Positions 5,267 to 63,928 are shown, counted from the stretch's first letter. The stretch is 64,000 bases of DNA from Octopus bimaculoides (GCF_001194135.2 NC_068989.1:3788789-3852788), one strand, 5' to 3'. The notes: a model not told the origin generated them from the sequence alone. Program-made: numbers and translations.

Positions 5267-5347
5267 CATACAGTTCTTGATTTGAGAGACGAGCAATGTT
5301 CGTAAATTATTTTACATTTGACGGATTTTTGTCCTCATCTTGTTGTT
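5267..5347 (-). mobile_element. Solo 3' tail of SINE family H (hammerhead SINE)
   Basis: ACAGTTCT...TTTACATTTGACGGATTTTTGTCCTCATCTTGTT aligns with 29449-29525. Confidence 0.7.
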
Positions 5348-5516
5348 ATTATTATCATTAATAACACACACACACTCGTATATTATTGTTGACGCTAAAT
5401 TGGATTATTTCCTCATTCCTAAAATTCCATTGCAACAAAAGTTAATCGAGCATTCGATCACCTTCATTAGTGGATGTATGGCTGTTAGAGTATTAAAACG
5501 TGTTGGACACCTTTTG

Positions 5517-5820
5517 ATCGGTCATTTGACTGGTGACGTGATTAGTCGGTCATTTGACTGGTGACGTGATTAGTCGGTCATTTGACTGGTCACGTGATTA
5601 GTCGGTCATTTGACTGGTCACGTGATTAGTCGGTCATTTGACTGGTGACGTCATTAGNNNNNNNNNNNNNNNNNNNNGTCGGTCATTTGACTGGTGACGT
5701 GATTAGTCGGTCATTTGACTGGTCACGTGATTAGTCGGTCATTTGACTGGTCACGTGATTAGTCGGTCATTTGACTGGTGACGTCATTAGTCGGTCATTT
5801 GACTGGTCACGTGATTAGTC
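5517..5820. repeat. 28-bp minisatellite, at least 10 units, with a 20-N gap inside
   Basis: Unit GTCGGTCATTTGACTGGT(G/C)ACGT(G/C)ATTA starts at 5517, 5545, 5573, 5601, 5629, 5678, 5706, 5734, 5762 and 5790. Confidence 0.97.
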
Positions 5821-6738
5821 GCGGCGTTTTATATGATTGCAATTCTTTACCAAGTCCTGTTTTAGAAGTTAATCACGTGGTTAATGACGTTGGCTGTTTT
5901 GTCTGTGAAATTGGTTGTTTTTGACAGCAACCTTTGCAGGTGGTTCTATTTCAAATTTGATCACGTGGATATAGGCGTAATTAGTGGTGTGTTTGGGCAT
6001 AGAACAGGTAACGTGGCTGCTCGTATTTTTTTTTCTGTTTGATATTTGTTCTTTCGCCAGGTATACAAAGTCAGACTTCCATTGAAGATGCATAGGTGCA
6101 AAATAATTTCGTGTCGCAAATCAAGATGAGTTGGGATTTTCTATGGTAACGGTTGATATGAAAATTTCCGGTATAGAATGAGTACGAATGGCGAGCATGG
6201 CCTTGTTCAATATGGATCTATTCCGAAGGCATGGACGAACTTGTGAGAGTTTGCCTGCCTTTTGTAGTCGGGCAGTCTCTGCTACCCCATTGATTCTCGA
6301 GTCTGCATTTGACATACGCGTGTGCGATCGCGCCCATACAGATATATACACTTACTCAAGGCAATGCAGGCATATACACACACATACATGTGCACGCATG
6401 TGTGTATATGCATGTGTATCATCCTGTTCGGCGGTTTCTTTGTCTTGTCTCGACTAATCGATGCAAACGCCACACCCATTTTGTGATTTGATTTCACACT
6501 GCCTTCCATTTAGCGTCTGTTTGATTATCAAATAGCAATAATGATAATAATAATAATAATAGCAGATATATATACACATACACATATGCAAACACTTATG
6601 TGTGTGTATGTATATATATATATATATATGCATAAGCATGTATATATATATATATTGTATATACATATATATGCATATTTATATATATATATGTATGTGT
6701 ATGTGTATATATATATACTGTGATAGACAGAGAGAGAA

Positions 6739-7147: not shown

Positions 7148-7255
7148 TTCTTTTATTCTTTTACTTGTTTCAGTCATTTGACTACGACTACGCTGGAGCA
7201 CCGCCTTTAGTCGAGCAAATCGACCCCAGCACTTATTCTTTGAAATCCTAGTACA
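7148..7255 (-). mobile_element. SINE family B, 3' end
   Basis: Minus strand GGGGTCGATTTGCTCGACTAAAGGCGGTGCTCCAGC...GACTGAAACAAGTAAAAGAATAAAAGAA matches the 3' ends at 55671 and 63535. Confidence 0.8.
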
Positions 7256-12059: not shown

Positions 12060-12590
12060 TTGTTATGAGTAGCGTTTGTCTCAGTCTAGTTTTAGTTCTT
12101 CCGTGTAGCTGGCCTATTCACCGAATAGCAAGACGTCTCCAATCATCCTACATTTAGAACGGTCATCTTACCGGGTGGTCAGTTGCTTCAGATCTTTCTA
12201 CATAGTGCTCCGTATCTTTTCGGGTCTCCTTCACTTATTTCGTTCATCTGGTTGTAGCTACTGTAAAGTTCTCTTGTGTATTCGTTCTTTTGGCAGTCGG
12301 AAAATGTGATCTGCAACTTTCACTCTTTCAACAACAACCGCAGGCAAACTGCGCAGATTGGTTCTTGTCTGGAATTCAAAATTTGTGATTCTATTCCTGT
12401 AAGTAATCTTCAGTATTCTATATAAACACCATTTTAGCAGAGAGCATTCATTTCGTGTTATGCGAAGAGGTATTCGTAAATGATACGATGGTACATTACG
12501 TAAATGGTCAAAAAGAGAACGCCTCTTGAGCATTCTCGCTCTGATCTTCCAATCCTTTGTTCTTTTTCTGTACGTAGTATATTTTAAAAC
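12060..12590 (-). mobile_element. RTE-clade LINE ORF C-terminal fragment, decayed
   Basis: CLYRILKITYRNRITNFEFQTRTNLRSL...KVADHIFRLPKERIHKRTLQ*...RRPEKIRSTM*KDLKQL matches the RTE pattern CLRRIL.I.W.D.ITN.EV..R...GH..R....R.PK....GRP.K.W...DL. Confidence 0.7.
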
Positions 12591-12611
12591 AGTGACTAAA
12601 GGCGAAAACAG

Positions 12612-12792
12612 AAATTGCTTGGCGGCATTCCTTCCGAATTTACGCCCTGAGTTCAAATTCTGTTGAGATCGGCGTTGTTTTTCATCTTCTCAGGATCGAT
12701 AAAATAAGTACCGTCTGAAGACTGGGGTTGATGTAATTAAGTTCTCTCCTCCTCCTCCGAAATTTCTAGCCTTTTACCAACATTTGAAACCA
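12612..12792 (+). mobile_element. SINE family A, degraded, tail type 2
   Basis: CTGAGTTCAAATTC...TTTCATCTTCTCAGGATCGATAAAATAAGTACC...GAAATTTCTAGCCTTTTACCAACATTTGAAACC. Confidence 0.75.
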
Positions 12793-13621: not shown

Positions 13622-14011
<390 letters not shown>

Positions 14012-15984: not shown

Positions 15985-16285
<301 letters not shown>

Positions 16286-23789: not shown

Positions 23790-24270
23790 ACACCACATAC
23801 CCATGTCACGGTGAAAACCATCAGGTGGTAAGAAACCCCTATTTTGCCCTGCATATAAATCTCCTGGAAACTGTTCAAAAACGTGCAACCAAACGAATAC
23901 CAGCGGTCAGACATCTGCCATACTCTGATCGTCTTGCTTCCCTGGGCATGGATACATTGATGGTCAGACGTCTGCCAACTGACTTGGTAGACACCCACAA
24001 GATTATCCACCATCTTTCCAACAACAACCTTGGACACGTTTTTGAATTCCATATGACAAACACTCGCGGACATGCTTATAAAATCAAAGACCAACACAGC
24101 ACCCATGACTTTCGGAAACATTTTTTCACGCTCAGAATTGGTGAAGCATGGAATAAGCTACCAGCATCAGTTTTTAGCTGTTGAGATATTAAATCCTTCA
24201 AAACTTCCATGCATCCTAAAATCCACCAACAGTACACCTGATGGGTGTAATCCATACATGGTCTGTTTGT
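23790..24270 (+). mobile_element. CR1-clade LINE 3' end
   Basis: NPYFALHINLLETVQKRATKRI...LPYSDRLASLG...TRGHAYKI...RKHFFTLRIGEAWNKLP, the canonical CR1 ORF2 C-terminus. Confidence 0.9.
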
Positions 24271-27692: not shown

Positions 27693-29448
27693 TTATAGAC
27701 GTAGACATACATATACATGTATATATGAGAGAGAATAGATAATTATACAATTATTGGATGCGTTCATAATTATATAGAAACATTCGCATATCAATAAGTG
27801 TTTCGGAATTATGCGAGTATCGGAAATATAGTAAATAAAGATGCAAAGCTAATAAAACTACGAAATACAAGAAATAATAAGACAGAAAACCAGGTGAAGA
27901 GTGAGAAATTATATGAATAATTTAGAAGAGAAAATATATTCATCAATAAATAAATATACAGTAAGATACGGATAACGTGGTGCATAGTAAGAGTAAGATT
28001 GTACACAATCACTACTGTTACATGGGAAATCGTTGTATATGAAGTATATTAAACACAAATGTATACTTGGGGTGATTAGAAAAATTATTGTTTCAGAATG
28101 TGTGTTTAGTAAGGCATTCATAATATACAGAATTTTATTGACTTCTATATTACAAAATATGATATTTAGTCTGTTGTGTTTCCACCTTAAAATTTACTGG
28201 TGATGAGAATTTTCCAGTTTAACTCACAGGTTTCTATTCTTTGAGTGCCAAATATATATTGAATGTGATGTGGCATTGTAGTAAACTTCTCAGTGACAAG
28301 CGTAATATAGATGTCCGATGAGCGTGGTTCCAGACGGTCCAAACCTCGAATGGGATTATCCATGATCGTTTATTTTTTTAGTCCATAAAGAATAAGCAAA
28401 AATTATTTTTCATTTGTTTCATGGTAAAGCTTCACAAGTTTAAGCTACTTTGACTAAGATTTGTCTCACCCGATAAATGCACAACGTTGTTTATAATTAG
28501 TTGAACTCCCGGCGAACGAAAAAACTATCGTACAAATTAAACTGAAACTTTCAATTTTCTGAAAGTACATATTCGGTGTTCTTATACCACCGTTAATAGT
28601 CTATCACTCTCTATTAGTGAAGGAGTACCAAAAATGGCGGTAAATGTTTACATTTATCTGTATAAATTTTCACACACACAGTACACGCATTTTTCATGAA
28701 ATCTTGTTTCAATACATACATGCACACATACATGCATACATACATACATACATACATACATACATACATACATACATACATACATACATAAATTTGCGTG
28801 TGTGCGTGGGTGTGGGTGTAAATCAGATTAAAGTGGATTCAGAAATCGTAGTAGTTTCCTCTATCAGCATTGCTGCAAACACCGGCTAACANNNNNNNNN
28901 NNNNNNNNNNNNNNNNNNNNNNNNNNNNNNNNNNNNNNNNNNNNNNNNNNNNNNNNNNNNNNNNNNNNNNNNNNNNNNNNNNNNNNNNNNNNNNNNNNNN
29001 NNNNNNNNNNNNNNNNNNNNNNNNNNNNNNNNNNNNNNNNNNNNNNNNNNNNNNNNNNNNNNNNNNNNNNNNNNNNNNNNNNNNNNNNNNNNNNNNNNNN
29101 NNNNNNNNNNNNNNNNNNNNNNNNNNNNNNNNNNNNNNNNNNNNNNNNNNNNNNNNNNNNNNNNNNNNNNNNNNNNNNNNNNNNNNNNNNNNNNNNNNNN
29201 NNNNNNNNNNNNNNNNNNNNNNNNNNNNNNNNNNNNNNNNNNNNNNNNNNNNNNNNNNNNNNNNNNNNNNNNNNNNNNNNNNNNNNNNNNNNNNNNNNNT
29301 ATATATATATGAAGGCATTCTGCATGTCATTGACAGCTGCCCGAAATACCGTCTTAAACAGATGAAATTTTGCTCTGCGTTTTGTCGAGTACAAAATCGA
29401 TTTATTCGAACGAGGGAAAAAGCAACACTGCAAATCTTCACTGTCACC

Positions 29449-29621
29449 ACAGTTCTATATCTAACAGGAGAGGAATTATGTACATTGTTTACATTTGACG
29501 GATATTTGTCCTCATCTTGTTTGTTGTTAACACCTCGTTTCGGCTGATATACCCTCCAGCCTTCATCAGGTGTCTTGGGGAAATTTCAAACTTGGTTTCT
29601 CACTCCTAAGTTATTTTTCGA

Positions 29622-29700
<79 letters not shown>

Positions 29701-29765
29701 ATCACTGCCTGGGATCGTAAAGGAGTCTTAGGGTTAGTAGCCCACGCTCTTAACCACTACGCCAT
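29449..29765 (-). mobile_element. SINE family H: tRNA-like head, (TAA)n, body with hammerhead fold, tail
   Basis: Head ATGGCGTAGTGGTTAAGAGCGTGGGCTACTAACCCTAAG...ACGATCCCAGG has an A-box TGGCGTAGTGG, a GGG-CTACTAA-CCC anticodon-like loop and a degenerate B-box; the tail also occurs at 5267-5347 and 29766-29812. Confidence 0.75.
29529..29574 (-). ncRNA. Minimal type-I hammerhead ribozyme fold; this copy has a broken cleavage triplet
   Basis: GACAC-CUGAUGA-A-GGCUG-gaggguauau-CAGCC-GAAA-CG-AG-GUGUU: stem I GACAC/GUGUU, stem II 5 bp, both conserved core boxes present; AG stands where U16.1-H17 is required. Confidence 0.7.
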
Positions 29766-29812
29766 ATGAGGACAAATATCCGTCAAATGTAAATAATATA
29801 AATAATGTTCAT
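29766..29812 (+). repeat. Inverted copy of the family H 3' tail abutting the SINE 5' end
   Basis: 29766-29797 is the reverse complement of 29484-29515 at 31/32 nt. Confidence 0.9.
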
Positions 29813-30394
29813 TGTCACCAATTTGAACGTGTCAGTCATCAACCCTTCGGTAAAAGTAGAAAGGAAAAAAGAGCTCTAGTCAACTGAAAGGGAGACAACT
29901 TGGATTATGATAATTCAATCACATTCTGAAAAGATAAGACAAGGGAAGATAAATTCATTGGAATGGCAGCTTTGCCATGCTCTCTTCACTCACTGGACAT
30001 AACACAACCAGATTTCGATTTATTGACGTCTTTTGAACAATTTACACTAAAAAAAAAATAGTCAGAAATAGGGACAGTGTTGAAACGGTAATAAAAAACA
30101 TTTTTCTTTTCTAAAAAGCTTGCTTTTTTCTTTTTAATGAGGAAGCAGAAAACTGGTTTCGAGGAGGAGAAAATGCTATCACTAATGATGGTAGTTCTAT
30201 TATGAATATGCTTTATACTGATTCCGATTCGTTACCTGAAATACGAGATTAGTTTTCGATACCACATACTCGCATACATGCGCGTACAAACACACACACA
30301 CAAAATGTCATAAGAAAAAATACAAATCTTGTTAATTGCAGCTACCCTGGGTTTCGTTGTCTGCTCTAATCCAGCTATCAAACCGTCTTGTTCT

Positions 30395-44373: not shown

Positions 44374-45391
44374 CATATNNNNNNNNNNNNNNNNNNNNNN
44401 NNNNNNNNNNNNNNNNNNNNNNNNNNNNNNNNNNNNNNNNNNNNNNNNNNNNNNNNNNNNNNNNNNNNNNNNNNNNNNNNNNNNNNNNNNNNNNNNNNNN
44501 NNNTATATATATATATATATATGTATATGTATGTGTGTGTATTTATCTGTACACATAAGTACACACACGTACACAAAAATGTTTTTCCTATTCACTCGAG
44601 ATTTAAAATATCATAAACATACATATATGGCGACAATCTTATGTATGTATGTATGTATGCATGCATGTATGTATGTATGTGTGCGTGCGTATGCATGCAT
44701 GTATGTATGTATATATGTACCTATATAAGTATGTATGTTCCTATGTATGCATATACGTATGTACGTATCTATGTATGTATGTATGTAGGTGGGTAGGTAG
44801 GTAGGTAGGTAGGTAGGCAGATTGATATTTAGGTATCTATATAAAATATGTATATATATACATATATATATTATATTACATATTACACGCGCGCACACGC
44901 ACGCACACACACACACACACGCTTATGTATGAACAAAGAAATACAAAAACACAAATCTATGAGTGTAAAACCTCCAAATATGCCAGTGCACGATAGCATC
45001 CAGTACAAACGTTGGAGTTCTGAAAACCATTTACGTGCTTAATTGCAATGCAAATATGTAAAAAGTTATTTTATTTGTTTAAAGATTTGTTAAAATTTAT
45101 TTAAATTTACATTTAAATGGATACCTTGCATCATAATTTCCTGTAAGAACCATTTAGTTAAATTACATTATAAAAACTATCTTAATAATAAATAAGTTAT
45201 TTTATTCTATCACTTGAAATATTTGTTATTTTCAAAATACGGTGAATCATGGGATGCTATTAAACTAGATATCTGTTAGTGAGGGTTTGAAAGACGTGTG
45301 TTGAAAGTTGTGTGTGTGTGTGTGTGTGTGTGATAATACATTCATGCACCCATACAAACACAAATGCATGTATATAAACATACATATATAT

Positions 45392-45540
45392 AAGCGTAGG
45401 AGTGGCTGTGTGGTAAGTAGCTTGCCTACGAACCATATGGTTCCGGGTGCAGTTCCACTGCGTGGCACCTTGGGCGAGTGTTTTCTACTATATCCTCCGG
45501 CCGACCAAAGACTTGTGAGTGGATTTGGTAGACGGAAAAC

Positions 45541-45572
<32 letters not shown>

Positions 45573-45744
45573 GTGTGTGTGTGTGTGTGTGTGTCTGTAT
45601 ATATGTTTGTGTCTGTCTTTGATCCCCGACATCGCTTGACAACCGATACTGGTGTGTTTACGTCCCCGTAACTTTAGCGGTTCGGCAAAAGAAACCGATA
45701 GAATAAGTACTAGGCTTACAAAGAATAAGTCCTGGGGTCGGTTT
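45392..45744 (+). mobile_element. SINE family B, near full length
   Basis: CGTAGGAGTGGCTGTGTGGTAAG head, internal (AT)n(GT)n, then GCTTGACAACCGATACTGGTGTGTTTACGTCCCCGTAAC...AAGAATAAGTCCTGGGGTCG. Confidence 0.9.
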
Positions 45745-45776
<32 letters not shown>

Positions 45777-46995: not shown

Positions 46996-47856
46996 TATAT
47001 ACAGCACTAAATAATAGTTTTAAGGGCGAGTTTCTTTTATAGATGCAGCAGCCGTTTTAACACCAATTTTAAGGCAGTAAGTATTATGTAAGCAAAGTAG
47101 ACCTAGTAAACGATGATGATTTATAATGAATTTCAACTTTTGAGAGAAACAGACCAAATATTAATTGATTTTTAGGATTTCGAATTATATATCTTTAATA
47201 TATAATATGTTTTTAAGTTTTGATATTTGATAGTTAAGTAGAAAATGATATTGTAGATTGGAATTGATGTTTACCTTATCTCTCCACATCAATTTCTATA
47301 ATGTACATGCATTAATACAATTATAACTTCTACATAAACTAATGTTATTTTATAAAATATTAAAAGGTTATAATTATGGGTAACATGTATAATTTAAAAA
47401 GTTAGAAAAACTGAAATGAAGCTAATGGTGGAATAGTTTTGATGATGAAAAGGGATTTCAAGAATAATGGAAAATTATATACGGTGAGTTAAATGATGTA
47501 AAAGGTAAATAATTTAAGCATAAAAAGTAAAAATATAATTATAGCAATAATATAAATTATATGATATAGAAGTAGTGATCCAAAATGTGAATATTATGCA
47601 CGGGATGATGTACTGCTATGAGATTATAAGTGGGTGATTACACCTATAACAATATGCTTCTACCTCATTCACCTTTAACGAACGAAGTCGCAATCAGAAG
47701 GAATTTATCATAAAAAATCTATGGATGATTTAGCGGAATGTTAATGCGTATTTAATTCTTCCAGCAACGCCTGATGAATTCCAATTCCAGCTGTTTATAT
47801 TACTTTTTTTGTATACACATTACCATTCCGATAAATCATCCATAGGTTTTCATGGT

Positions 47857-48594
47857 AAGTACATACCCAGTTTCATCCAGGATGACATCGACTTACTGTC
47901 ACATTTTCCCAAAACAACTGAAACAAATTCACTTTTACTTAGTTTTGATGTGGTAAGCCTTTACACCAATATTTCACATGATTTAGAAATAAAAGAGATT
48001 AGATACTGGGTAGAAAAACATAGAGAAGTGACCCCAACAGACTCACAGTACCATTTATATTAGACACAGTCAAACTTATTCTGGAAAACAACACATTCTT
48101 CTTCAATGGAAAAAATTTAATCCAAATTAAAGGCACGGCGATAGGAACGAGGTTTGCCCCCGTTTATGCGAACTGAATTGGGATATCTAGAACAACAACT
48201 CTACCAAGAAGTAGAGGAAAACTATAGCACTGAATTTAGAAATTATATTGAAAAGGCATGGAAGAGATACCTTGCCGATTGTTTCATAATATTGTCAGAA
48301 GCTGTAAATAATCTGGAAGAGTTCAATATCCTCCTGAACAACCTATCCTCATCTCTCCAATTTACAAAGGAGATGAGTAGTACCAAATTACCATTCCTAG
48401 ATATAATGGTAATTAAAAACGACACCACCATTACCACAGATATATACTACAAACACACGGACACACATCAATACCTGAATCATAAGTCGTGCCATTCACC
48501 ACATTCAAAACGCAACATCCCATACTACCCAGCCAGAAGTGTTTGTACCATTGTAGAAGATGCAAATATCAGGAACAGGCATTTCCTGAACGTC
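47857..48594 (+). mobile_element. Penelope-like element reverse transcriptase core, decayed
   Basis: IPSFIQD...LLSFDVVSLYTNI; QIKGTAIGTRFAP; KRYLADCF (decayed RYLDD); LPFLDI; TDIYYKHTDTHQYL..KSCHSPHSKRNIPY, the PLE RT and thumb signature, with frameshifts. Confidence 0.9.
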
Positions 48595-48628
48595 TGAGCT
48601 TTCCTGCAAGTGTTTCGAGTACTTTTTG

Positions 48629-55265: not shown

Positions 55266-55671
55266 ATTGGTGTGGCTATGTGGCAAGAAGTTTGCGTTCC
55301 TACCACATTGCTTTCTTATCACGGGTTCAGTTCCACGAGATGGCACATTGAGCAAGTGTCTTCTGCTGTAGCCTTTGTCCAACCAAAGCCTTCTGGGTGA
55401 ATTTGGTTGACGGAAACTGAAAAGAACCCACTCGCATATATATGTGTGTGTGTGTGCATGTGTGTGTTTGTCCTTTACCACCTCTTGACAACCGGTGTTG
55501 GTGTGTTTATGTTACGGCAACTTAGCAGTTCGGAAAAAAACAACAACAATAGAATAGGTACCAGGATTTAAAATGTAAAAATCTGGGTTCGATTCATTCG
55601 ACACAAAACTCTTCAAGGCGGTGCCCCAGCATGGCCACAGTCAACTGGCTGAAACAAGTAAAAGATAAAAC
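55266..55671 (+). mobile_element. SINE family B, full length
   Basis: Head, internal (GT)n and the 3' end CTTCAAGGCGGTGCCCCAGCATGGCCACAGTC...GAAACAAGTAAAAGATAAAA are all present. Confidence 0.87.
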
Positions 55672-63534: not shown

Positions 63535-63928
63535 TTTTCTTTTTCTTTTATTTGTTTGTCATTTGACCGCGGTCATGCTGGAACATCGCCTTTAGTCTGA
63601 AAAATCGAACCCAGGACTTATCCTATTGGTCGCTTTTGCTGAACTGCTACGTTATGGGGACATAAACAGACCAACATCGATTGTCAAGCGATGGTTGGGG
63701 GACAAGCACAGACAGACAAACATATATACACACACACATGCACACACACACACACACGCATATATATATACGACGAAGTTCTTTCAGTTTCCATCTACCA
63801 AATCCACTTATAAGGCTTGGTTGGCCCGAGACTATAGAAGAAGACACTTTCCCAAGGTTCCACGCAGTGGGATTGAACCTGGAACCATGTTGTTAGTAAG
63901 CTACTTACCACAGAACCACTCCTGTGCC
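63535..63928 (-). mobile_element. SINE family B, full length
   Basis: Minus strand head CACAGGAGTGGTTCTGTGGTAAGTAGC, B-box GGTTCAATCCC, internal microsatellite, 3' end AAAGGCGATGTTCCAGCATGACCGCGGTCAAATGAC. Confidence 0.88.

What the first reader, a model, noticed from the sequence alone, without database searches (positions are those of the whole stretch)
29449..29765. tRNA-headed SINE carrying a hammerhead ribozyme fold: candidate Penelope-mobilised SINE or retrozyme hybrid
Seen: a Pol III-type tRNA-like head (A-box TGGCGTAGTGG, 7-nt CTACTAA loop, degenerate B-box), a (TAA)n spacer, then GACAC-CUGAUGA-A-GGCUG[loop]CAGCC-GAAA-CG-AG-GUGUU with intact stems I and II. No run of four or more T occurs on this strand until 29417-29421, so a Pol III transcript of about 350 nt would include the ribozyme. 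Known: minimal type-I hammerheads with a vestigial, palindromic stem III (acting as dimers) are typical of Penelope-like element pLTRs; an extra A between A9 and G10.1 is tolerated in some natural hammerheads; schistosome SM-alpha repeats are a precedent for tRNA-like head plus hammerhead. Inference: this is a SINE family whose 3' module was captured from a PLE and whose RNA is self-processed. This copy has AG instead of U-H at the cleavage site and is predicted inactive.
Basis: partly seen in the sequence, partly recalled or inferred. Interest (0 to 1): 0.85.

Follow-up and report, generated by a model that had tools for sequence, protein, structure and literature searches.

The report
tRNA-headed octopus retroposon with dead hammerhead
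A single 354-bp mobile-element insertion in an octopus genome joins a tRNA-like promoter head to a tail whose hammerhead-ribozyme-like fold cannot cut. The way it inserted looks like the work of Penelope-like retroelements, but only this one full copy could be examined.

Summary
The locus is a bounded insertion (29450-29803) with a 17-bp target-site duplication (15/17).

The insert contains:
- a tRNA-like head with a perfect A box, an anticodon-like loop and a degenerate B box at correct tRNA positions;
- a (TAA)25 run and a 47-nt spacer;
- a hammerhead-like hairpin;
- an 80-nt 3' module ("X") without poly(A). X also occurs as a solo 5'-truncated copy at 5270-5351.

The inverted copy, the one-sided tail, the lack of poly(A) and the hammerhead idiosyncrasies (extra base between A9 and G10.1, 6-bp helix II, 5-bp helix I) match published Penelope-like element (PLE) insertion anatomy.

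The motif fails two defining hammerhead features: A instead of U16.1, and G instead of H17. G17 pairs with C3 in the predicted fold. The low divergence of the arms and duplication suggests the transposed RNA already carried these changes, so self-cleavage was probably not part of how this copy moved.

No further octopus copies could be retrieved, so family consensus, head-tail linkage and the autonomous partner remain untested. Verdict: partly supported. Interest is moderate.

The parts
29433..29449 (.). Left copy of the target-site duplication, AATCTTCACTGTCACCA
   Evidence: This is the only direct-repeat family found in 29300-29900 (15/17). The core is 12/13, p about 0.002 by shuffling the flanks. 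The boundary coincides with the end of homology to the solo copy at 5270.
29450..29474 (-). 25-nt 3' terminal 'tail' (...TCCTCTCCTGTTAGATATAGAACTG). It is present at this end of the insert only. There is no poly(A) or simple-repeat terminus.
   Evidence: It is shared with the solo copy (distal alignment p = 0.0005) and absent from the inverted arm. Compare the one-sided 30-40-bp tail reported for PLE insertions (PMC8557442).
29475..29515 (-). Core of the 3' module 'X' (ATGAGGACAAATATCCGTCAAATGTAAACAATGTACATAAT), arm A of the inverted repeat
   Evidence: Inverted repeat of 41 nt, 38/41, with 250 nt between the arms. The 28-mer has 3 matches in the window against 0 expected.
29516..29528 (-). 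Linker AACAACAAACAAG between the hammerhead-like fold and X
   Evidence: Shared with the solo copy at 5339-5351.
29529..29574 (-). Hammerhead-like hairpin. Helix I GACAC/GUGUU; CUGAUGA 29569-29563; extra A 29562; helix II 29561-29556 / 29547-29542; GAAA 29541-29538; C15.2-G16.2 at 29537-29536; A (where U16.1 belongs) at 29535; G (where H17 belongs) at 29534.
   Evidence: In the minimum-free-energy fold, G29534 pairs with C3 and A29535 with U4, giving a 7-bp outer stem.
29575..29621 (-). 47-nt unique spacer between (TAA)n and the hammerhead-like fold
   Evidence: No relative in the window or in the loci fetched.
29622..29697 (-). Internal (TAA)25 microsatellite
   Evidence: TRF: 25.3 copies, 100% matches. 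It lies inside the target-site duplication. Another octopus SINE in the window (45391-45745) also carries an internal microsatellite, and the alignment to O. vulgaris copies spans it.
29698..29765 (-). tRNA-like Pol III head: A box 29764-29754, anticodon-like stem-loop 29743-29731, B-like box 29721-29711
   Evidence: Read directly from the sequence. The geometry fits tRNA numbering. It is not called by ARAGORN or the Rfam tRNA model. It is single-copy in the window.
29766..29803 (+). Inverted, 5'- and 3'-truncated copy of X (arm B). It abuts the head on one side and the right target-site duplication on the other.
   Evidence: 38/41 to arm A; the inner 28 nt are identical. The distal part is not homologous to the X tail (p = 0.83).
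29804..29820 (.). Right copy of the target-site duplication, AATGTTCATTGTCACCA
29417..29421 (-). First T5 run downstream of the head, in flanking DNA. It is the likely Pol III terminator for a read-through transcript of about 350 nt.
5270..5351 (-). Solo, 5'-truncated copy of linker + X + tail, embedded among microsatellites. It has no head and no hammerhead-like fold.
   Evidence: (79.5% over 83 nt). There is no homology upstream of the linker (p = 0.9).

Best explanation
The locus is one retrotransposition event in an Octopus genome: a 354-bp non-autonomous retroposon (29450-29803, minus strand) flanked by a 17-bp target-site duplication.

Reading 5' to 3', the element has:
- a tRNA-derived head with an internal Pol III promoter;
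- an internal (TAA)n;
- a short unique spacer;
- a stable two-helix hairpin that is a hammerhead derivative of the Penelope-like-element (PLE) 'minimal' type;
- an 80-nt terminal module (linker + X + tail) with no poly(A).

Proposed mechanism (inferred):
1. Pol III starts at the head, reads through the element (no internal T4) and stops at a flanking T5.
2. The 3' hairpin and X module are used in trans by a PLE reverse transcriptase/GIY-YIG endonuclease for target-primed reverse transcription at a staggered break.
3. Priming from the second DNA end on another X 3' region leaves the inverted partial X copy at the 5' end. This is the pattern typical of PLE insertions.

The hammerhead-like fold is catalytically dead. 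A replaces U16.1, and G replaces H17 and pairs with C3. It was most likely already dead in the RNA that was copied. Self-cleavage is therefore not part of how this copy moved. A dead ribozyme is in fact what a head-plus-tail SINE needs, because cleavage would separate the promoter from the priming end.

Shown: the anatomy, the boundaries, the fold and the failed cleavage site. Inferred: Pol III transcription, PLE dependence and the timing of ribozyme loss.
For: Single event:
- The only direct repeat in 29300-29900 brackets the whole composite. The 12/13 core has p about 0.002.
- The left boundary is fixed independently by the end of homology with the solo copy.
- There is no duplication around the head plus (TAA)n (p 0.8-0.9).

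PLE-style anatomy:
- An inverted partial copy abuts the 5' end.
- A 25-nt tail is present at one end only.
- There is no poly(A).
- A 5'-truncated solo copy lies next to microsatellites.
- All of these are described for PLEs in PMC8557442.

Hammerhead traits specific to PLE minimal hammerheads (PMC4209133):
- a G10.1-C11.1 pair;
- helix II of 6 bp and helix I of 5 bp;
- C15.2-G16.2.

The same CUGAUGA-N-GGCUG...CAGCC-GAAAC frame is used by at least 124 hammerhead-type motifs in metagenome contigs. Two of these read GAAACGUU.

PLEs are present in this genome. An RT remnant lies at 47.8-48.6 kb, 74% identical to an O. sinensis protein, and its relatives carry GIY-YIG. PLE relatives in L004 and L005 carry intact minimal hammerheads; in L004 it lies about 190 nt after the ORF.

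The chance rate of the motif is about 0.006 per window, and the fold has z = -3.3.

Ribozyme dead before insertion: arms 38/41 and duplication 15/17 give about 4% change per lineage. Two hits on the two critical adjacent bases would then be expected with probability of about 0.002.
Against: - There is only one full-length copy. The head and the hammerhead-like fold are single-copy in the window and absent from 40 kb of O. sinensis and O. vulgaris, so no family, consensus or covariation exists yet.
- X has no detectable similarity to the PLE remnant in the window or to any PLE locus fetched.
- The tail is 25 nt, not the published 30-40 nt.
- The copy starts 1 nt before the A box, so the 7-10 nt expected upstream of the A box in a Pol III transcript are missing or overlap the inverted arm.
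- ARAGORN and Rfam do not call the head a tRNA.
- The B box is only 8/11.
- Across a whole genome, a few hundred hammerhead-like motifs of this looseness are expected by chance.
Confidence: 0.5

Rival explanations
1. Nested or adjacent independent elements. A head-to-head pair of truncated retroelement 3' fragments (X, with a decayed hammerhead) inserted first and made the 17-bp duplication. An unrelated short tRNA-SINE with a (TAA)n tail later landed exactly at their junction.
For: The head has no relative elsewhere in the window, while X does. A (TAA)n run is a common SINE 3' tail. The solo X copy shows that X can move without the head.
Against: There is no target-site duplication around head + (TAA)n. 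The SINE would be only about 66 nt plus tail. It would also have had to hit the exact junction with the inverted arm, since the A box starts 1 nt from arm B. Octopus SINEs can carry internal microsatellites.
Confidence: 0.17
2. An ordinary tRNA-derived SINE with a LINE-derived tail. The hammerhead-like hairpin is either a chance match or an RT-recognition stem-loop. The inverted arm is a by-product of template switching or an unrelated truncated neighbour.
For: SINE/LINE pairs with a conserved 3' stem-loop are the norm. No PLE homology was found for X. The cleavage-site triplet is absent. Loose hammerhead-like motifs are expected by chance at genome scale.
Against: The 3' end has no poly(A) or short tandem repeats. 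The inverted arm duplicates the same 3' region as the direct copy, which L1-type twin priming does not produce. The motif has several independent PLE-type traits (extra base, G10.1-C11.1, helix lengths, C15.2-G16.2). X does not match the LINE fragments in the window at 12.3-12.7 and 23.8-24.2 kb.
Confidence: 0.17
3. This is a decayed copy of an active SINE/retrozyme hybrid family whose consensus carries an intact minimal hammerhead (GAAACGUH). The hammerhead cleaves as a dimer and processes the RNA.
For: Intact motifs with the same frame and GAAACGUU exist in other organisms (L022 and L064). Homology of the solo X copy starts 4-5 nt 3' of the predicted cleavage site, next to a GTGTTA that could be the helix I strand. 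SMalpha is a precedent (PMC8490949).
Against: Both critical bases differ, at least one by transversion, in a copy whose arms and duplication are only about 9% diverged from each other. Cleavage of a monomeric Pol III transcript would detach the head from the priming end. There is no tandem arrangement. The GTGTTA at the solo copy sits at the end of a (GT)n run and is ambiguous. There is no homology upstream of the linker.
Confidence: 0.12
4. A foldback/MITE-type DNA transposon, or an assembly artefact producing a false palindrome near the gap at 28892-29299.
For: There is a 41-nt inverted repeat flanking a 250-bp core with a direct duplication outside. An assembly gap lies 150 bp away.
Against: The inverted repeats are sub-terminal on one side (25 nt in) and the actual termini are not inverted. 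A 17-bp duplication is too long for cut-and-paste families. A solo arm with the same precise terminus exists at 5270. The arms differ at 3 positions, unlike an assembly fold-back.
Confidence: 0.04

Closest known systems
Minimal (min-) hammerheads of Penelope-like element pLTRs (Cervera & de la Pena 2014, PMC4209133)
   Same: The CUGAUGA and GAAA boxes are present. There is an unpaired nucleotide between A9 and G10.1, a G10.1-C11.1 pair, a long helix II (6 bp), a short helix I (5 bp) and C15.2-G16.2 as the start of a palindromic helix III. The motif sits near the 3' end of a retroelement that lacks poly(A).
   Different: Position 16.1 is A, not U, and position 17 is G, not H, so there is no A15.1-U16.1 pair and no cleavable site. 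No second copy nearby could form a dimer. It is not located in a repeat flanking an RT/EN ORF.
PLE insertion architecture (Craig et al. 2021, PMC8557442)
   Same: An inverted truncated copy lies immediately adjacent to the 5' end, giving inverted repeats that flank the unit. There is an extra tail at one end only, heavy 5' truncation (the solo copy), and a microsatellite neighbourhood.
   Different: There is no ORF, no pLTR or tandem partial copy, and the tail is 25 rather than 30-40 bp. The inverted copy also lacks the terminal 25 nt. No sequence link to a coding PLE was found.
Schistosome SMalpha / Sjalpha SINE-like elements with a type I hammerhead (Ferbeyre et al. 1998, as cited in PMC8490949)
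   Same: A unit of about 330-350 bp combines Pol III-type promoter boxes with a hammerhead motif and is dispersed as a retroposon.
   Different: The SMalpha hammerhead is canonical and active, and the elements occur in tandem or dispersed in thousands of copies. Here the motif is non-cleaving and only one full copy was seen. Sequence similarity was not tested because no SMalpha sequence was available.
Metazoan non-LTR retrozymes (Cervera & de la Pena 2020, PMC7229834; Li et al. 2026 bioRxiv 10.64898/2026.07.22.740005)
   Same: These are small non-autonomous elements of about 300 bp, AT-rich, with a type I hammerhead and a proposed derivation from PLE pLTRs.
   Different: Retrozymes are tandem repeats with a hammerhead in each unit and make circular RNAs. 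This locus is a single unit with target-site duplication, a tRNA-like head and a dead motif.
Conventional tRNA-derived SINEs with LINE-derived tails (including octopus OR1/OR2/OK; Ohshima & Okada 1994, cited in PMC4824008)
   Same: The layout is tRNA-related head, body and a 3' module shared with other copies. There is a target-site duplication, and an internal microsatellite as in another octopus SINE in this window.
   Different: The 3' end has no A-rich or short-repeat terminus. An inverted copy of the tail sits at the 5' end. The tail carries a hammerhead-like fold, and no LINE partner was found.

Membership tests
Hammerhead ribozyme (type I / PLE minimal) | Conserved core boxes C3-U-G-A-N-G-A9 and G12-A-A14 | tested here: met
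   CUGAUGA at 29569-29563 and GAAA at 29541-29538.
Hammerhead ribozyme (type I / PLE minimal) | Helix II closed by G10.1-C11.1 between the two boxes, and helix I formed by the flanks | tested here: met
   Helix II is 6 bp (GGCUGG/UCAGCC) and helix I is 5 bp (GACAC/GUGUU).
Hammerhead ribozyme (type I / PLE minimal) | A15.1-U16.1 base pair opening helix III | tested here: not met
   Position 16.1 is A (29535). My descriptor finds no valid arrangement, and alternative registers examined by hand also fail.
Hammerhead ribozyme (type I / PLE minimal) | Cleavage-site nucleotide H17 (not G) | tested here: not met
   Position 17 is G (29534). It pairs with C3 in the minimum-free-energy and centroid structures.
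Hammerhead ribozyme (type I / PLE minimal) | Match to a curated covariance model | tested here: inconclusive
   No Rfam hammerhead hit at E<=10. However, the same search misses a canonical hammerhead with the extra base and scores an intact PLE minimal hammerhead at only 14 bits.
Hammerhead ribozyme (type I / PLE minimal) | Covariation in helices across family members; self-cleavage | not testable with these tools
   No other copy of the motif was found in the window or the fetched loci. No eukaryotic genome search was available.
tRNA-derived SINE | Internal Pol III A box and B box at tRNA-like spacing | tested here: inconclusive
   The A box is 11/11. The B-like box is 8/11 and starts 43 nt after the A box. 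The anticodon-like loop falls on positions 32-38. About one A-box match per window is expected by chance (my calculation).
tRNA-derived SINE | Recognisable tRNA-related fold or sequence | tested here: not met
   ARAGORN finds nothing at default or relaxed thresholds, and there is no Rfam tRNA hit. The resemblance to tRNA-Ser(GCU) rests on memory only.
tRNA-derived SINE | Flanking target-site duplication | tested here: met
   A 17-bp duplication, 15/17. It also encloses the inverted arm.
tRNA-derived SINE | Multi-copy family with constant head-body-tail linkage; tail shared with an autonomous partner | tested here: inconclusive
   Only the tail recurs, as the solo copy at 5270-5351. The head and body are single-copy in 64 kb plus 40 kb of congeners. 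A genome-wide test was not possible.
Penelope-like element insertion / non-autonomous PLE derivative | Inverted 5'-truncated copy immediately adjacent to the 5' end | tested here: met
   Arms 29475-29515 and 29766-29806, 38/41. Criterion from PMC8557442.
Penelope-like element insertion / non-autonomous PLE derivative | Short extension (tail) at one end only; no poly(A) | tested here: met
   A 25-nt tail lies on the arm-A side only. The published length is 30-40 bp, so the match is approximate.
Penelope-like element insertion / non-autonomous PLE derivative | Sequence identity of the terminal region with an RT/GIY-YIG-encoding PLE | tested here: not met
   There is no similarity to the window's PLE remnant (47.8-48.6 kb) or to L001-L005. 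The sample was tiny, so this is not decisive.
Penelope-like element insertion / non-autonomous PLE derivative | Partial tandem (pLTR) organisation | tested here: not met
   There is no direct repeat of element sequence.
Non-LTR retrozyme | Tandem repeats of about 170-400 bp, each with a type I hammerhead | tested here: not met
   TRF finds only (TAA)n and a 9-mer. There is a single hammerhead-like motif in 64 kb.

The most novel reading that the evidence does not exclude
This is the first glimpse of a SINE family that is driven by a tRNA-type Pol III promoter but is copied by Penelope-like-element machinery rather than by a LINE. Its captured pLTR hammerhead has been disabled and retained as a structured RT-recognition hairpin, because an active ribozyme would sever promoter from tail. 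Head-less tail copies would come from 5' truncation, or from cleavage in relatives that are still active.
Probability: 0.3. Interest if true: 0.75.

Novelty: new variant of a known kind. Interest (0 to 1): 0.5.

Why it matters
SINEs are defined by their dependence on LINEs. I found no description of a tRNA-headed SINE that uses a Penelope-like element as its partner in the papers searched. Short non-autonomous Penelope elements and hammerhead-bearing SMalpha/retrozymes are the nearest precedents.

If a family exists, it would offer three things:
- a compact natural substrate for asking which 3' RNA features a PLE reverse transcriptase recognises;
- a natural experiment on whether PLE hammerheads are needed for mobility, since here a non-cleaving version apparently transposed;
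- a marker for PLE activity in cephalopod genomes.

If it turns out to be a one-off chimera, it is an ordinary decayed repeat.

Tried and rejected
- Exact-pattern scans for the X core found 0 hits in metagenome, viral and prokaryote genome collections.
- A chimeric six-frame peptide of the element searched against 5.8 billion proteins, hoping for spurious ORFs on octopus contigs, gave no hit at E<=10.
- A search for element k-mers in paper full text found nothing relevant.
- I fetched O. sinensis (L001) and O. vulgaris (L003) loci around PLE-like genes. They share other SINEs with the window at 80-90% identity but contain no head, hairpin or X.
- I fetched further PLE loci (L002, L004, L005). 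They are not cephalopod and have no X homology. They were useful only as hammerhead controls.
- Pfam gave no hits on four window ORFs.
- Extended homology between the solo copy and the hammerhead region was tested and rejected (p = 0.9).
- Arm B as a full-length X reaching about 29835, as MAFFT suggested, was rejected. Its distal part is not significantly similar to X.
- Type III or alternative hammerhead registers, and other Rfam ribozyme classes, found nothing.
- An hAT-type 8-bp duplication with terminal inverted repeats was rejected because the termini are not inverted.

Full report
**Source and setting**

The window is a microsatellite-rich draft assembly with 14 N gaps. A PLE-like ORF at 48154-48597 is 74% identical to an Octopus sinensis protein. 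Several window repeats match O. sinensis and O. vulgaris chromosomes at 80-90% identity. The source is therefore an Octopus, probably O. bimaculoides (an inference).

On the minus strand the locus reads as follows.

- A box: TGGCGTAGTGG, 29764-29754.
- 7-nt loop: CTACTAA, 29740-29734, closed by GGG/CCC.
- B-like box: TTTACGATCCC, 29721-29711, 8/11.
- (TAA)n: 25.3 perfect copies, 29697-29622.
- Spacer: 47 nt.
- Hammerhead-like stretch: GACAC-CUGAUGA-A-GGCUGG[AGGGUAUA]UCAGCC-GAAA-CG-AG-GUGUU, 29574-29529.

If the A-box T is tRNA position 8, the loop falls exactly on positions 32-38 and the B-like box starts 43 nt after the A box. The head therefore has tRNA geometry. ARAGORN does not call it, even relaxed, and neither does Rfam.

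**Is the hammerhead-like motif more than chance?**

- It is the only one of 31 CTGANGA sites in the window with an adjacent helix II plus GAAA.
- A relaxed descriptor hit once in 20 Mb of simulated sequence, about 0.006 per window.
- The fold is unusually stable: -19 kcal/mol, z = -3.3.
- At genome scale a few hundred such loose motifs are expected, so context matters.

- The repeat finder on 29300-29900 returns exactly one inverted repeat. It joins 29475-29515 and 29766-29806 (41 nt, 38/41, 250 nt apart).
- It also returns exactly one direct repeat: AATCTTCACTGTCACCA at 29433-29449 and AATGTTCATTGTCACCA at 29804-29820. The 12/13 core has p about 0.002 against shuffled flanks.
- The left boundary is confirmed independently. 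A third, solo copy of the 3' module at 5270-5351 ends at the same ...AGAACTG terminus. Its distal 40 nt align significantly with this locus (p = 0.0005).
- The locus is therefore a 354-bp insertion (29450-29803) inside a 17-bp target-site duplication.

Read on the minus strand, the insert contains, in order:

1. an inverted partial copy of module X;
2. the tRNA-like head;
3. (TAA)25;
4. the spacer;
5. the hammerhead-like hairpin;
6. the AACAACAAACAAG linker;
7. X;
8. a 25-nt tail.

The inverted arm lacks the tail. No duplication flanks the head plus (TAA)n alone. Another octopus SINE in the window (45391-45745) also carries an internal microsatellite, and the alignment to O. vulgaris copies spans it. 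The (TAA)n therefore need not mark an element end.

**What kind of insertion is it?**

The terminus has no poly(A) or short-repeat tail. The 5' inverted piece duplicates the same 3' region as the direct copy, which L1-type twin priming does not do.

Craig et al. 2021 (PMC8557442) describe PLE insertions with these features:

- heavy 5' truncation;
- a 30-40-bp tail often at one end only;
- a bias towards microsatellites.

The locus matches each point, with a tail of 25 nt.

Cervera & de la Pena 2014 (PMC4209133) list traits of PLE minimal hammerheads that were not imposed by their search:

- a G10.1-C11.1 pair;
- a long helix II and a 4-5-bp helix I;
- palindromic 15.2-16.2.

The motif here has all of them.

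PLEs are present in the genome. An RT remnant lies at 47.8-48.6 kb, and its relatives carry GIY-YIG domains.

Two PLE loci fetched through those relatives carry intact minimal hammerheads:

- L004: CUGAAGA...GAAA-ACGUU-A, about 190 nt after the ORF.
- L005: a 3.69-kb tandem array with the U3-A8 covariant core and AGUACU-A.

**Is it a hammerhead?**

By definition it is not. Position 16.1 is A and position 17 is G. In the predicted structure these pair with U4 and C3. That turns the junction into a 7-bp stem, a 6x6 internal loop and a 6-bp stem.

They fall into three groups:

- gut-metagenome motifs with a helix III hairpin and GUC;
- a large termite-gut-metagenome family with palindromic ACAUGU followed by H;

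My descriptor accepts 78 of the 124 and rejects the octopus motif in every register.

The Rfam negatives are not informative. Rfam misses a canonical comparator that has the extra base, and it gives only 14 bits to the intact L004 motif.

**When did the ribozyme die?**

- The two arms and the two duplication copies were identical at insertion and now differ at 5 of 58 positions. That is about 4% change per lineage.
- Two substitutions on exactly the two critical neighbouring bases, at least one a transversion, have a probability of about 0.002.
- The transposed RNA most likely already read AG.
- There is also a mechanistic reason (an inference). In a monomeric Pol III transcript, cleavage between 29534 and 29533 would detach the promoter-bearing head from the 84-nt 3' end that primes reverse transcription. 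A head-plus-tail element can therefore only propagate with a weak or dead ribozyme.
- Craig et al. note that PLE clades lacking canonical hammerheads proliferate well.

**An unresolved lead**

Homology of the solo copy begins 4-5 nt 3' of the would-be cleavage site, next to a GTGTTA at the end of a (GT)n run. This could mean a ribozyme-defined 5' end, or it could be coincidence. Homology further upstream was tested and rejected.

**Limits**

None of the available collections holds the source genome. These routes all failed to yield further copies:

- X-core scans of metagenome, viral and prokaryote collections;
- a six-frame peptide search;
- literature k-mer searches;
- 40 kb of congeneric sequence.

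The family consensus, the head-tail linkage in other copies, helix covariation and the identity of the autonomous partner are therefore all untested. X shows no similarity to any PLE locus examined.

**Comparison and verdict**

- In architecture, the closest known thing is schistosome SMalpha, a SINE-like element with an active type I hammerhead (PMC8490949).
- For the motif, the closest are PLE minimal hammerheads.
- For the integration pattern, the closest are PLE insertions.
- It is not a retrozyme, because there are no tandem units.
- Short non-autonomous Penelope elements are known (PMC6685494). I found no report of a tRNA-headed, PLE-dependent SINE.

I rate the single-event, SINE-like, PLE-style reading at about 0.5. 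The active self-processing family reading rates about 0.12. If confirmed, this would be a new variant of a known kind. Interest is 0.5.

Noticed in passing
window 47809-48597 (+): Degenerate Penelope-like element RT remnant. ORFs at 47809-48063 and 48154-48597 contain the HTH_animal (PF26215) region. It is 74% identical in protein, and 88% in DNA over 223 bp, to O. sinensis LOC115230173. Relatives carry RVT_1 and GIY-YIG domains. No hammerhead and no X module lie downstream.
   Followed up: partly
window 45391-45745 (+); also 63610-63923, 13639-14009, 16009-16116, 55484-55565, 7216-7254: An abundant octopus SINE-like repeat of about 355 bp with an internal (TA)n/(CA)n microsatellite. At least 6 copies occur in 20 kb of O. 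vulgaris (L003), and copies occur in O. sinensis (L001), at 80-90% identity.
   Followed up: partly
window 5518-5821: A 28-bp minisatellite (TCGGTCATTTGACTGGTCACGTGATTAG, about 11 copies, spanning a 20-N gap) lies about 170 bp from the solo X copy. Each unit contains a near-palindromic GTCACGTGAT.
   Followed up: no
window 23825-24184 (+) and 12258-12656 (-): C-terminal fragments of LINE-type reverse transcriptases, identified by motifs recognised from memory. Pfam found nothing. Neither shares sequence with the X module.
   Followed up: partly
L006-L125 (metagenome contigs): The frame CUGAUGA-N-GGCUG...CAGCC-GAAAC recurs in more than 120 metagenome contigs. One class, from gut metagenomes, has a helix III hairpin and GUC. 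A larger, clearly repetitive family, whose contig names look like termite-gut JGI projects (my recollection, unchecked), has a palindromic ACAUGU helix III. It may be host or protist DNA. The extra base is U in 107 of 124 motifs.
   Followed up: partly
L069 1067-1191 and 1870-1994 (same contig as L120): Two of the ACAUGU-type (presumed termite-gut) hammerhead repeats sit head-to-head as a 125-nt inverted repeat (72%) 678 nt apart. This is the same 3'-ends-outward arrangement as at the octopus locus.
   Followed up: no
L005 (ENA ERZ25067879 contig, 15 kb): A tandem array of a complete-looking PLE with a 3.69-kb period. Each unit has one minimal hammerhead with the U3-A8 covariant core (UUGAUAA...GAAAGUACUA). 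L004 carries a CUGAAGA...GAAAACGUUA motif about 190 nt after its GIY-YIG ORF.
   Followed up: partly
Rfam controls: L010 695-785, L004 11335-11420, window 29515-29590: The Rfam hammerhead models do not detect a canonical type I hammerhead that has one extra base between A9 and G10.1. Both that control and the octopus motif instead give the same spurious C/D-box (sR22) hit through UGAUGA.
   Followed up: yes
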